Origin: Saccostrea cucullata
Taxonomy: Eukaryota
Assembly: GCF_032062105.1 (NCBI RefSeq)
Contig: NW_026929847.1
Coordinates: 1 to 64,000 of the forward strand
Reading direction: 5' to 3'
Length of the DNA: 64,000 bases
The notes under the pieces were generated by a model. It worked only from the letters and a program-made list of their open reading frames with translations. It was not told the origin of the DNA and searched no databases. Made by a program: the position numbers and the translations under genes. Shown here in pieces: positions 24,241-32,445 of the stretch; positions within the stretch are counted from its first letter, which is position 1; each line of letters opens with the position of its first letter.

Positions 24241-24844
24241 AAATCGGGACGAGTTTATTTTTTGTTAAACTTGTTATTCCCGTGAGAAAGTAGATGAAAC
24301 AAGCCATGTACTGTGTGTCCAAAAGACATTTGTAACTTTGTAATTGACTGTGAAAATTGAAAACGAAATAAATGAAGATAATTCTATATTATATACTATT
24401 TTACCGTAAATTAATGATTTACCATGTTTCCAATATGTCGGCCGTGATCAGGTGACACCCAGTTATATTTAGGTTATTATCTACATAGGGTGTTTATTTA
24501 TCTACATCTAGAGGTTAGGAACGTTTAGATATCTGAAACCTTTGTGCTATACAACTTGTTAACCCATATCCGGTTTAGTCATACTACTTTCTAGTACGAA
24601 ATTGTCATTGCAAATCAAAATGCCAACATAATAAATTAAAGATTTTAATAGTTACAAAAATCAATATCAATTATAAAACTCAATGACAAATTGTAGTCAT
24701 TATATGTATATCGACCCAATATAACTTACAAAATGATTAAACAAAACTGTGAAATTCTTGTTTCATCAACATGTTTATCAATATTTACCTTGTTTTAGAA
24801 ATTGATGCTGATGTAGGGAAGGATCCATTTTTCAAACTGTGTCT

Positions 24845-27800
24845 GGACACTGATGACGATCTACCAACTGGTGTGGTGGACGACAGTGATGATGATCTAC
24901 CAGCTGGTCTGGGGGAGGACAGTGATGACGATCTACCAGTTACTATAGGGAAAAACAGTGATGATGATCTACCAGCTGGTGTATGGAAGGACATTGATGA
25001 CGATCTACCAACTGGTGTGAAGGAAGACAGCGATGACAAACTACCAGCTGGTGTGGGGGAGGACAGTGATGTGATAACTATCTACTAGCTGGTGTAGGGG
25101 AGGATAGTAATGATGATCTACCAGCTGGTGTAGGGGAGGACAGTAATGATGATCTACCAGTTGGTGTGGGGGAGGACAGTGATGACGATCTAATAGCTGG
25201 TGTAGGGGGGGGGGCGGTGATGACAATCTACCAGCTGGTGTGGGGAGGACAGTGATGGCGATCTATTAGCTGGTGTAGGGGGGGGGGGACGGTGATGACA
25301 ATCTACCAGCTGGTGTTGGGGAGGACAGTTATGATGATCTACCAGCAGGTGTAGGGGAAAACACTGATGACCATCTACCAGTTGGTATGGGAGAGGACAG
25401 AGATGACGATCTACCAGCTGGTGTGGGGGGAGGACAGTTATGATGATCTTCCAGCTGGTGTTGGGGAGGACAATGATGACTATCTACCAGCTGCTGTTAC
25501 GGAGGACAGTGATGACCATCTACCAGCTTGCTTGGGGGAGGACAGTGATGACCATCTACCCACTGATATGGGGAGAACAGTGATGACGATCTACCAGCTT
25601 GTGTGCAGGAAGACAGCGATGACAAACTACCAGCTGGTGTGGTGGAGGACAGTGATGTGATGACTATCTACTAGCTGGTGTAGGGGAGGACAGTGTTGAT
25701 GATCTACCAGTTTGTGTGGTGGAGGACAGTGATGATGATCTACCAACTGGTGTGGGGGGACCCGGGAGGACGGTGATGACAATCTACATGCTGGTGTTGG
25801 GGAGGACAGTTATGACCATCTACCAGCTGGTGTGGGGGGAGAACAGTTATAATGATTTTCCAGATGGTGTGGGAGAGGACAGTGATGATGATCTACCATC
25901 TGGTATGGGGGAGAACAGTGATGATGATCTACCAGCTGGTATGGGGGAGAAACAATGATGATGATCTACAAGCTGGTGTGGGGAGGACAATGATGACGAT
26001 CTACCAGCTGGTGTAGGGGTGGACACTGATGATGATCTACCAGCTGGTGTGGGGGAGGACAGTGATGACGATCAACCAGCTATTGTTGGGGTGGACAGAA
26101 ATGACGATCTATCAGCTGGTATGAGGGAGGACAGTGATAACGATCTACCAGCTATTGTGGGGGAGGACAGTTATGACGATCTACCAGCTGGTGTGAGGGA
26201 GGACAGTGATAACGATCTACCAGCTATTGTGGGGGAGGACAGTAATGACGATCTATCAGCTGGTTTGAAAGAGGACAATGATGACGATCTACCAGCTGGT
26301 GTAGGGGAGGACAGTAATGATGATCTACCAGCTGGTGTGGGAGAGGACAGTGATGATGATCTACCAGCTGGTGTGGGAGAGGACAATGATGACGATCTAC
26401 CAGCTGTTGTGGGGGAGGACAGTGATGATGATCTACCAGCTGCTGTGGCGGAGGACATTGATAATGATCTAAGTGTGGGGGAGGACAGTGATAACGATCT
26501 TCCCGCTGGTGTGGGGGAGGACAGTGATGATGATCTACCAGCTGGTGTGGAGGAGGACAGTGATGATGATCTAGGTGTAGGGGAGGACAGTGATGATGAT
26601 CTAGGTGTAGGGAAGGACAGAGATGATGATCTAGGTGTGACGAAGGACAGTGATGATGATCTACCAGCTGATGTGGGAGAGGACAGAGATGAAGATTTAC
26701 TAGCTGGTGTGAGGGAGGGCAATGATGATGATCTACCAGTTGATGTGGGGGAGGGCAATGATTATGATATACCAGCTGATGTGGGGGAGGGCAATGATGA
26801 TGATGTACCAGCTGTTGTGAGGGAGGACAGTGATGATGATCTACCAGCTGCTGTGGCGGAGGACATTGATGATGATCTAAGTGTGGGGGAGGACAGTGAT
26901 AACGATCTTCCCGCTGGTGTGGGGGAGGACAGTGATGATGATCTACCAGCTGGTGTGGAGGAGGACAGTGATGATGTAGGTGTAGGGGAGGACAGTGATG
27001 ATGATCTAGGTGTAGGGGAGGACAGTGATGATGATCTAGGTGTGGGGGAGGACATTGATGATGATCTAGGTTTGGGGGAGGACATAAATGATGATCTACG
27101 TGTGAGGGACGACAGTGATGAAAATCTACCAGCTGGTGTGGGGGAGGACAATAATGATGATCTAGCAGATAGTGTGGAGGAGGACAGTGATGATGATCTA
27201 CCAGCTGCTGTGGCGGATGACAGTGATGATGATCTAGGTGTAGGGAGGACAGTGATGATGATCTAGGTGTGGGGGAAGACATGAATGATGATCTACGTGT
27301 GGGGGAGGACAGTGATGATAATCTACCAGCTGGTGTGGGGGAGGACAATAATGATGATCTACCAGCTGGTGTGGGGGAGGACGGTGATAACGATATAACA
27401 GATCGTGTGTGGGTGTGGGGGAGGACATTGATGATGATCTAGGTTTGGGGGAGGACATTAATGATGATCTACGTGTGAGGGACGACAGTGATAAAAATCT
27501 ACCAGCTGGTGTGGGGGAGGACAATAATGATGATCTAGCAGATAGTGTGGAGGAGGACAGTGTTGATGATCTACCAGCTGGTGTGGGGGAGGACAGTGAT
27601 GACGATCTACCAGCTATTGTTGGGGAGGACAGTAATGATGATCTACCAGCTGGTGTGGGGGAGGACAATGATGATGATCTAAAAGCTGGTGTGGGGGAGG
27701 ACAGTGATGACGATCTCTCAGTTGGTGTGGGGGAGGACAGTGATGATGATCTGCCAGCTGATGTGTGGGAGGACAGTGATGATGATCTACCAGCTGGTGT

Positions 27801-30800: not shown

Positions 30801-31073
30801 GGGGGAGGACGGTGATGATGATCAACCAGCTGGTGTGGGGGAGGACAGTGATGACGATCTACCTGCTGGTGTGGAGGGAGGACAGTGATGACGATCTACC
30901 AGCTGATGTGGGGGAGTACAATAATGACGATCTACCAGCTGGTGTGTGTGAGGACAGTGATGATGATCTACCAGCTGGTGTGGGGGAGTACAGTGATGAT
31001 GATCTACCAGCTGGTGTGGGGGAGGACAGTGATGACGATCTACCAGCGGGTGTGGGGGAGGTTAGTGACGATG
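24845..31073 (+). repeat. 36-bp minisatellite (gaggacagtgatgacgatctaccagctggtgtgggg; reads EDSDDDLPAGVG), roughly 160 units, with 27-bp variants
   Basis: Direct reading. Longest open stretch is 26019..27266; frameshifts fall mostly in G runs. Confidence 0.95.
30281..30722. mobile_element. hAT-like MITE inserted in the minisatellite
   Basis: TIR tagggctgaaac / gtttcagcccta, 8-bp TSD gtgtgggg (30273-30280 and 30723-30730), and subterminal cgata repeats. Confidence 0.9.
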
Positions 31074-32445
31074 ATAAAAAAATACATGAAACAGACAAAA
31101 GTTTGTAAACATTTGTATTTGAATTTTTCAGGGTGAACTAGAACTTCTAATGATGGATGAAGAAACTGACATCAGGAAACATTTCAATCTGAAGTCAATC
31201 ATGAAAGACTCCAGCAAAAAGAAGAAATTATCAGGGGATCAAAAGCCAGATGGAGATTTTTAGGTATATCCATGTATATATTTTTTTATACATGTATCTA
31301 TTCAGTTTTGTAAATATGTTTTGTATAAAGTACCAGGTACTGGATATTCTTTATTTCATACGTTTTTTTTAAATAACATTTATAATAATAAATATATTTG
31401 AGATAATTTTTATGGGTATAATTACAGTGAAATCACTAATTTCAATTTCATGGGGTTAAATTTTTATGGTTTAAGGAAAAATGTTTTTTTTTTTAAGTTG
31501 ATTTAAATTTATGGTTAAAGAAGTGTAGTGTTGCTTTAATTGAAAAATTAATCAATTATGGAGGCAATAAATTTGTGTCTTTCCTCAAGTTATGAAAATA
31601 AAATAAAGCTGAAACAAAAAAATATTTTAAAGTAACTTATTTAGAATAATTTTATATAAATCAATAATCAATTTTTAATAATGTTTAGACGTAATTTATT
31701 ATTTCAGATAAATGAGAAGGACGACAAATTTACCGCCATTCTTAATTCCCTTTTGTACAACATTGATCCATCGGCCCCAGAATTTAAAAAGACTAAATCA
31801 ATGGAGGCAATTATCGAAGAAAAACTGAAGAGAAGGGCTTCAGGAAAAACCCAGAAAATTATCAGCGGACAAAAACGGAAATTAGATAGTGGCAATATTA
31901 AGACTGGACACTCAGAGAAACATTGGAAGTCAGATTCAGGGAGCACACTTTGTTAAATCTAAAACTCAGACTTTTCAGAACAAGAAAAGGAAAAAAATAA
32001 GAGAAATTATTGGAGACTTGTGTTTACAAATATTTGACAGAATCTAACTATTAATAAAATTTAAAAAAAAAATGTCTTAATCTTTATAAATCTAAAAAAA
32101 AAAGTGCAGAAAAACGATTAACGTTACAGTGCATTGTGTGATGTATTCCTGGACTATAGGTTAGTTAGTCAGTAAACCAAGTGAAATTTTTCTAGCTAAT
32201 ATGTGTTCTGCACTTTTTAAATATTTCAAAAGCTATTTTGTATTTCCCAAGTGAAAAATTCTTGTACAATTGGTTTTCTCAAGTGGCCAAATCATGAAGT
32301 TCCTGTTTTTATATTTATTCTTCTTTGCACTATCGTTGAGTCAATGAAAAGATTTTAATTGTCAAATTTAAAGCGCAAGCATGCACAAAATATAAATTTG
32401 TTTACTTAAATGAAGCATCAATTTCGTGGATTGTTTCGAATGAGT

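What the first reader, a model, noticed from the sequence alone, without database searches (positions are those of the whole stretch)
24804..31135. A 6-kb Asp-rich minisatellite born from an ESF1 coding exon
Seen: the unit cagtgatgacgatctaccagctggtgtgggggagga matches the ESF1 exon segment cagtgatgacgatctaccagttagggtagacgagga (1278-1313; SDDDLPVRVDED). The array starts right after the exon remnant DPFFKLCLD and ends by joining the intron just before the GELELL exon. The parental exon contains cagtgatga twice (1278 and 1673), a plausible slippage seed. Units keep multiples of 3 (36 or 27 bp), and 26019..27266 is open for 415 codons of DSDDDLPAGVGE. Inference: a directly traceable origin of a satellite from a housekeeping exon, and raw material for a hyper-acidic protein compositionally reminiscent of Asp-rich shell-matrix proteins (Aspein/Asprich type; no homology claimed).
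Basis: partly seen in the sequence, partly recalled or inferred. Interest (0 to 1): 0.8.

Follow-up and report, generated by a model that had tools for sequence, protein, structure and literature searches.

The report
Minisatellite born in ESF1 pseudogene fragment
A 36-base piece of the housekeeping gene ESF1 was copied head to tail about 160 times inside a broken spare copy of the gene's tail end; its origin can be traced step by step, but the repeat evolves like neutral DNA and almost certainly makes no shell protein.

Summary
The array is real: 161 units of a 36-bp motif at 24848-31062, about 90% identical to their consensus. Its origin from ESF1 exon 11 is well supported: the unit occurs only in ESF1-derived loci, and ESF1 sequence flanks it on both sides. 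The window's 1278 copy is not the parent. It is another broken 3' fragment (30/36 match; the tree rejects it as sister). The best seed match (34/36) is on contig C17514, and the single intact 14-exon ESF1 is on C2483. A 28-unit sister array on C17585/C3655 shares an intron insertion, so the repeat probably arose once in a duplicated fragment carried along with a tandem B-box/NHL gene cluster.

The protein idea fails. 40 of 161 units break the frame, and short units are 30 bp, not 27. A 442-bp MITE splits the array, there is no codon bias (omega about 1), the 5' exons and a signal peptide are missing, and the downstream exons carry a stop and a frameshift. The 415-codon ORF is a recently amplified block without indels, and it is open on both strands. 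No reads were available, so expression is untested. This scan's earlier notes already placed the working ESF1 elsewhere.

The parts
24709..24804 (.). End of a high-copy dispersed repeat abutting the ESF1 remnant; marks the 5' truncation of this ESF1 copy
   Evidence: 1573 candidates genome-wide, matches stop at about 24804
24807..24847 (+). ESF1 exon-11 remnant: tail of the 36-bp seed (24807-24823) plus the 24-bp spacer (24824-24847), followed by unit 1; this seed-spacer-seed junction is the predicted first-duplication intermediate
   Evidence: 14/17 and 19/24 matches to C17514 exon 11
24848..30280 (+). Minisatellite, units 1-152 (36-bp consensus; 30-bp subfamily in units 45-75; local block duplications)
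25965..27266 (+). Stop-free stretch (433 codons; listed ORF 26019..27266), units 32-67 with no frameshift; the minus strand is also open for 404 codons over the same region
30281..30722 (.). 442-bp non-autonomous DNA transposon (MITE) with terminal inverted repeats starting TAGGGCTGAAAC and a perfect 8-bp target duplication (30273-30280 / 30723-30730), inserted inside unit 152; hAT-like by TSD length (inference)
   Evidence: (251 candidates, best other copy 89%)
30723..31077 (+). Minisatellite, rest of unit 152, units 153-161 and an incomplete terminal unit
31078..31131 (+). Last 54 nt of ESF1 intron 12; about 1.56 kb of parental sequence (rest of exon 11, exon 12, flanking introns) is missing before it
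31132..31263 (+). ESF1 exon 13 copy (GELELL), 91% identical to the intact gene, premature stop at its last codon (codon 44)
31264..31707 (+). Intron 13 with an insertion of about 240 bp shared only with the sister array copy (444 and 451 nt versus 202-243 nt in the others measured)
31708..32000 (+). ESF1 exon 14 copy (NUC153), 14-bp deletion after 31945, then a frameshift and stop
32449..34685 (-). Broken B-box/NHL (TRIM-like) gene, tail to tail with the ESF1 fragment, split by an insertion of about 1 kb
158..3916 (+). Another ESF1 3' fragment (exons 9-14); exon 11 is split by a SINE-like insert (1334-1656, 12-bp target duplication). A paralogue, not the parent of the array

Best explanation
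A locus-specific, non-coding minisatellite born inside a duplicated, 5'-truncated ESF1 fragment. (1, shown) ESF1 lies tail to tail with a B-box/NHL (TRIM-like) gene, and 3' ESF1 pieces sit beside many copies of that gene. (1b, inferred) They were carried along as that cluster duplicated in tandem. (2, inferred from the junctions) In one fragment, misalignment between two 9-bp direct repeats 60 bp apart in exon 11 duplicated seed plus spacer. Loss of the 24-bp spacer between 3-bp microhomologies then left a 36-bp head-to-tail pair. (3, tree shown, order inferred) The fragment duplicated again, giving arrays that now hold 161 and 28 units. (4, shown) The window array kept growing by copying blocks of 3-5 units, gathered substitutions and G-run/GT slips without codon bias, and took a MITE insertion. 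The Asp-rich, stop-poor frame is inherited from the acidic ESF1 exon and is not maintained by selection.
For: Exact 16-mer hits fall only on ESF1-derived loci plus one unrelated hit; no metagenome hit. Seed match 34/36 on C17514; 9-bp and 3-bp microhomologies. One intact 803-aa ESF1 with a single-copy exon 1. Array copies form a clade 100/100 and share an intron insertion. 40/161 units out of frame, 12 of them as identical pairs. Omega 0.82 with and 1.19 without the CpG site; 0.93 and 2.0 in the ORF block. Only 1 of 108 possible single-base changes makes a stop in the ESF1 frame. MITE inside the array. Stop in exon 13, frameshift in exon 14.
Against: 36 consecutive in-frame units is unlikely if units are independent (permutation p=0.00025). 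It becomes common (P 0.04-0.53) only in simulations where growth continues until recently. Some frameshifts may be assembly errors: the haplotig C3655 shows about 5 private indels per kb in its array. The array copy looks mosaic (seed nearest C17514, 3' flank nearest the intact gene), so no extant direct parent can be named. No RNA data.
Confidence: 0.88

Rival explanations
1. Proto-gene: the in-frame block (units 32-67) is, or was, translated into a hyper-acidic protein (32% Asp, 40% Asp+Glu) of shell-matrix type, a partly de novo origin like that of notothenioid antifreeze glycoprotein.
For: 433 stop-free codons; no frameshift in 36 units against 11/31, 18/39 and 9/38 elsewhere; an ATG at 26121; the main length variant (30 bp) keeps the frame.
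Against: No synonymous excess in the block. The minus strand is equally open (404 codons). No hydrophobic leader in the ORF, and my acceptor-pattern scan found no site inside the array. The ESF1-frame reading from the 5' remnant stops after 94 codons at a 5-bp insertion shared by units 7 and 23. The word search found only a compositional match; the exact ORF is not in the collection. The block has few private mutations and near-identical sub-blocks, as expected if recently amplified.
Confidence: 0.04
2. The array in the window and the one on C17585/C3655 arose independently from the same slippage-prone exon.
For: Their 5' junctions differ (spacer kept in the window, absent in C17585), their 3' junctions differ, exon 13 is only 91% identical between them, and they share few clearly diagnostic unit variants.
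Against: The host fragments are sisters with a shared intron insertion. Both use the same 36-bp register and consensus and both lack exon 12. The other copies that keep exon 11 (C2483, C17514, C20823, window 1278) carry no array.
Confidence: 0.12
3. The repeat is an older dispersed satellite or transposon-borne repeat that landed in ESF1 fragments, or that gave ESF1 its exon segment.
For: Orthologous ESF1 sequences from other animals were not aligned here, so the age of the seed rests on this genome alone.
Against: The unit was found nowhere outside ESF1-derived loci. The intact gene holds it once, in frame, in a GT-AG exon. In C17585 the array begins exactly at the exon's own codons.
Confidence: 0.02
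4. The array's length or its frameshifts are assembly artefacts.
For: Fragmented assembly (23,869 contigs) with haplotigs; C3655 has error-like indels.
Against: Units are diverse (mean 90% to consensus) and nested in block duplications. Seven non-triplet units are identical in both sister haplotigs. 1.3 kb of the same repeat has no indel, and a 571-aa ORF on the same contig is intact.
Confidence: 0.04

Closest known systems
Minisatellite birth from short flanking direct repeats (Haber and Louis 1998; Taylor and Breden 2000; both as summarised in PMC3389668)
   Same: A unique segment bounded by a 9-bp direct repeat is duplicated; the terminal unit is incomplete; later growth is by local block copying.
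   Different: The seed is a housekeeping coding exon in a pseudogene fragment, and a second step (loss of a 24-bp spacer) set the 36-bp period; the intermediate junction and un-amplified paralogues survive.
CapA satellite DNA from a NOS1AP intron (bioRxiv 10.1101/213868)
   Same: A tandem repeat traced to a single-copy stretch of an ordinary gene.
   Different: CapA has 1.5-kb monomers, an intronic seed and up to 100,000 copies; this one has a 36-bp exonic seed and about 190 units at two loci.
Notothenioid antifreeze glycoprotein from a trypsinogen-like gene (as described in PMC6410882)
   Same: A short piece of an unrelated gene was amplified in tandem in a duplicated copy, in the reading direction.
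   Different: AFGP kept the donor's secretory signal and is a functional protein; here the 5' exons are lost, the frame is broken and no selection is seen.
Aspein / Asprich acidic shell-matrix proteins (bioRxiv 10.64898/2026.06.03.729799)
   Same: Only a high Asp content in the conceptual translation.
   Different: Aspein has a cleaved signal peptide, a hydrophobic N-terminal domain and SG(D)n blocks and is secreted by the outer mantle; none of these is shown here and no homology was found.

Membership tests
Minisatellite (locus-specific tandem repeat) | Head-to-tail units of about 10-100 bp, array of kilobase size | tested here: met
   36-bp period, 161 units, 5.8 kb
Minisatellite (locus-specific tandem repeat) | Confined to one or few loci rather than dispersed | tested here: met
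   Two array loci, one seen as two haplotigs; genome search counts are lower bounds
Minisatellite (VNTR) | Copy number varies between alleles or individuals | not testable with these tools
   No runs listed; the sister haplotigs both have 28 units
ESF1-derived pseudogene fragment | Homology to ESF1 exons, with an intact gene elsewhere | tested here: met
   RRM_ESF1 and NUC153 on C2483 exons; exon 13 copy 91% identical; exon 1 single-copy
ESF1-derived pseudogene fragment | Disabling lesions | tested here: met
   5' truncation, 1.56-kb deletion, stop in exon 13, 14-bp deletion in exon 14
Direct-repeat model of minisatellite birth | 5-10 bp direct repeats bounding the seed in the unamplified allele | tested here: met
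   9-bp repeat 60 bp apart in C17514 exon 11; the 36-bp period needs a further 24-bp loss at a 3-bp microhomology (inferred)
Aspein/Asprich shell-matrix proteins | N-terminal signal peptide | tested here: not met
   The ORF is repeat from its first codon, with no hydrophobic leader; judged by inspection, no signal-peptide predictor was run
Aspein/Asprich shell-matrix proteins | Sequence homology or SG(D)n architecture | tested here: not met
   No Pfam family; only a compositional hit in the word search
Aspein/Asprich shell-matrix proteins | Mantle expression and presence in shell | not testable with these tools
   No sequencing run was listed
Protein-coding tandem repeat | Frame kept and synonymous changes favoured | tested here: not met
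   40/161 frameshifted units; omega 0.8-1.2 overall, 0.9-2.0 in the ORF block
hAT-type MITE (the 442-bp insert) | Short terminal inverted repeats, 8-bp target duplication, dispersed copies | tested here: met
   the 8-bp duplication is perfect here and degenerate at three other copies; no autonomous partner was sought

The most novel reading that the evidence does not exclude
The array is an AFGP-like proto-gene caught early: the indel-free block (units 32-67) is transcribed and translated as a hyper-acidic polypeptide made from a ribosome-biogenesis exon, showing how low-complexity acidic shell proteins could arise in bivalves.
Probability: 0.04. Interest if true: 0.75.

Novelty: new member of a known kind. 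Interest (0 to 1): 0.27.

Why it matters
The origin of a minisatellite can rarely be traced. Here the intact gene, several un-amplified paralogues, the intermediate junction and a short sister array sit in one genome, so this is a clean textbook case of direct-repeat-driven birth from a coding exon. It is also a caution: repeats born from acidic exons give long ORFs that look like biomineralization proteins without any selection, and they can mislead gene predictors. It does not reveal a new mechanism or function.

Tried and rejected
The look-up of sequencing runs listed no run, so read laying could not be used; expression and read-level accuracy are untested. The PDB searches with exons 11 and 6 found nothing useful. 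Rfam found nothing in 1-36000. The metagenome pattern scan was empty. The word search with the 415-aa ORF gave one unrelated compositional hit, with only 8000 candidates of 0.55-1.75 times the length scored. Exact look-ups of the ORF and of the B-box/NHL protein were negative. The costly all-representatives search was not run, so ESF1 orthologues were not aligned. The single 16-mer hit on C16236 is unrelated sequence. I first took the repeated minus-strand ORFs for a LINE; Pfam shows B-box/NHL genes. Three Pfam calls failed on my frame errors. The window's two N stretches lie far from the finding and were left alone.

Full report
1. The observation. Tandem Repeats Finder reports a period-36 array at 24845-30284 and a second piece at 30723-31075. 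After removing the 442-bp insert between them, the array splits into 161 units from 24848 to 31062: 106 of 36 nt, 13 of 30, one of 27, one of 33, and 40 whose length is not a multiple of three. Mean identity to the consensus is 90%. The repeat is real, but the claim that units keep multiples of three (36 or 27 bp) is wrong for a quarter of them, and the common short variant is 30 bp. The insert at 30281-30722 has terminal inverted repeats and a perfect 8-bp target duplication, and it is a dispersed family (251 candidates, best other copy 89%). It is a MITE that landed inside unit 152.

2. Where ESF1 really is. The genome holds one full-length ESF1, on contig C2483 (L027 960-8350): 14 exons, all introns GT-AG, 803 codons with a single terminal stop. 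Its exons match RRM_ESF1 and NUC153, and exon 1 is single-copy. All other copies are 3' fragments: window 158-3916 (exons 9-14, exon 11 split by a SINE-like insert with a 12-bp target duplication), window 11.8-12.4 kb, window 31.1-32.0 kb, and pieces on C17514, C17585, C3655, C9709, C20823 and C4706. Most of them lie tail to tail with a single-exon B-box/NHL (TRIM-like) gene or its remains, as does the intact gene. The simplest reading (inference) is that the ESF1 tail was a passenger in tandem duplications of that gene cluster.

3. Origin of the unit. An exact 16-mer from the unit occurs 73 times in the 1.17-Gb assembly. All hits but one fall in ESF1-derived loci, and there is none in the metagenome collection. 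The consensus matches exon 11 of C17514 at 34/36, C20823 at 33/36, and the intact gene and window 1278 at 30/36 each. In SINE-free copies the exon reads seed (36 bp), spacer (24 bp), then a segment that begins with the same 9 bases as the seed; seed and spacer also end in the same 3 bases. The window array begins seed-tail, spacer, unit 1 (14/17 and 19/24 matches). That is the junction expected if slippage between the two 9-mers first duplicated 60 bp; loss of the spacer then gives the 36-bp period. The two steps are inferred, the junctions are shown. This fits the direct-repeat model of minisatellite birth as summarised in PMC3389668.

4. Which copy, and how often. A 28-unit sister array lies on C17585 and its haplotig C3655, starting exactly at the exon-11 seed. 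The two array-bearing fragments share an insertion of about 240 bp in intron 13 and form a clade (100/100). Forcing the window's array copy together with the 158-3916 copy is rejected (p-AU 8.9e-5). Exon 13 of the two array copies is 91% identical, so the array is not very young. The 3' flank of the window copy resembles the intact gene while the seed resembles C17514, so the copies look mosaic and no extant direct parent can be named.

5. Is it coding? The host copy is dead on both sides. A high-copy repeat abuts it at 24804, about 1.56 kb including exon 12 is missing after the array, exon 13 ends in a stop, and exon 14 has a 14-bp deletion. Reading the ESF1 frame from the remnant stops after 94 codons, at a 5-bp insertion present in both unit 7 and unit 23. 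Twelve frameshifted units occur as identical pairs in this array, and seven non-triplet units are identical in both haplotigs of the sister array, so many shifts are real. C3655 has about five private, error-like indels, so some may not be. Substitutions show no codon bias: omega is 0.82 with the CpG site and 1.19 without it, 0.93 and 2.0 within the ORF block, and no lower than in the other two frames once the CpG site is set aside. Stops are rare by construction, since only 1 of 108 single-base changes in the unit makes a stop in the ESF1 frame, and the minus strand is open for 404 codons over the same region.

6. The one point in favour of coding. Units 32-67 hold no frameshift, p=0.00025 if units were independent. 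They are not independent: there are near-identical blocks (43-47 with 55-59, 63-66 with 74-77), the middle of the array has fewer private mutations per unit (0.5-0.7 against 1.5 at the 5' end), and a synonymous variant clusters about as strongly (p=0.00075). In neutral simulations a run of 36 or more has probability 0.04-0.53 if growth continued until recently, and 0-0.02 if it ended early. Recent local amplification therefore explains the block, though this rests on a simple model. The ORF has no Pfam match, no relative beyond one compositional hit and no hydrophobic leader. Aspein has a signal peptide and an N-terminal domain, and notothenioid AFGP kept its donor's secretory signal.

7. What could not be tested. 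No sequencing run was listed, so expression, read accuracy and length polymorphism are open. ESF1 orthologues were not aligned.

8. Verdict. A neutral, locus-specific minisatellite born in an ESF1 pseudogene fragment, with an unusually complete trail back to its seed. Gene-derived tandem repeats are known (for example CapA from a NOS1AP intron), so this is a new member of a known kind. Interest 0.27. The proto-gene reading has about 4% probability.

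Noticed in passing
window 4350-6063, 12938-14658, 21831-23461, 32449-34685, 50994-52706 (all minus); also C17514, C17585, C3655, C2483, C4706: Tandem cluster of single-exon B-box/coiled-coil/NHL (TRIM-like) genes; 50994-52706 is an intact 571-aa ORF, and the other four copies in the window are broken. Most carry a 3' ESF1 fragment tail to tail.
   Followed up: partly
window 749-1070; L027 5640-5880: A second, 31-bp repeat born from ESF1: it repeats the exon-10 splice donor and is also present in the intact gene, so ESF1's acidic/basic low-complexity tail has seeded two different tandem repeats.
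   Followed up: partly
window 1334-1656: SINE-like insert with a TCAA tail and a 12-bp target duplication inside exon 11 of the paralogous fragment; the empty site is seen on C17514, C20823 and C2483.
   Followed up: yes
G000:C17514:631930-641335 and window 54722-56542: C17514 has ESF1 exons 7-8 separated from exon 9 by about 4 kb of other DNA; 1.8 kb of that DNA matches window 54722-56542 in reverse at 92%. Exon 9 on C17514 has a stop.
   Followed up: no
G000:C3655 vs C17585; C4706 vs C2483: Apparent haplotig pairs (98% and 100% identical); the assembly holds redundant alleles, so copy counts may be inflated.
   Followed up: partly
window 43125-49126: Large inverted repeat with nested AT-rich repeats (already noted by this scan as a foldback element).
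   Followed up: no
window 60291-61567: Reverse transcriptase ORF (Pfam RVT_1) of a non-LTR element, in two frames.
   Followed up: no
window 17150-17867 and 63139-63866: 166-bp tandem repeat (4.3 copies) and 63/189-bp tandem repeat at the window end.
   Followed up: no
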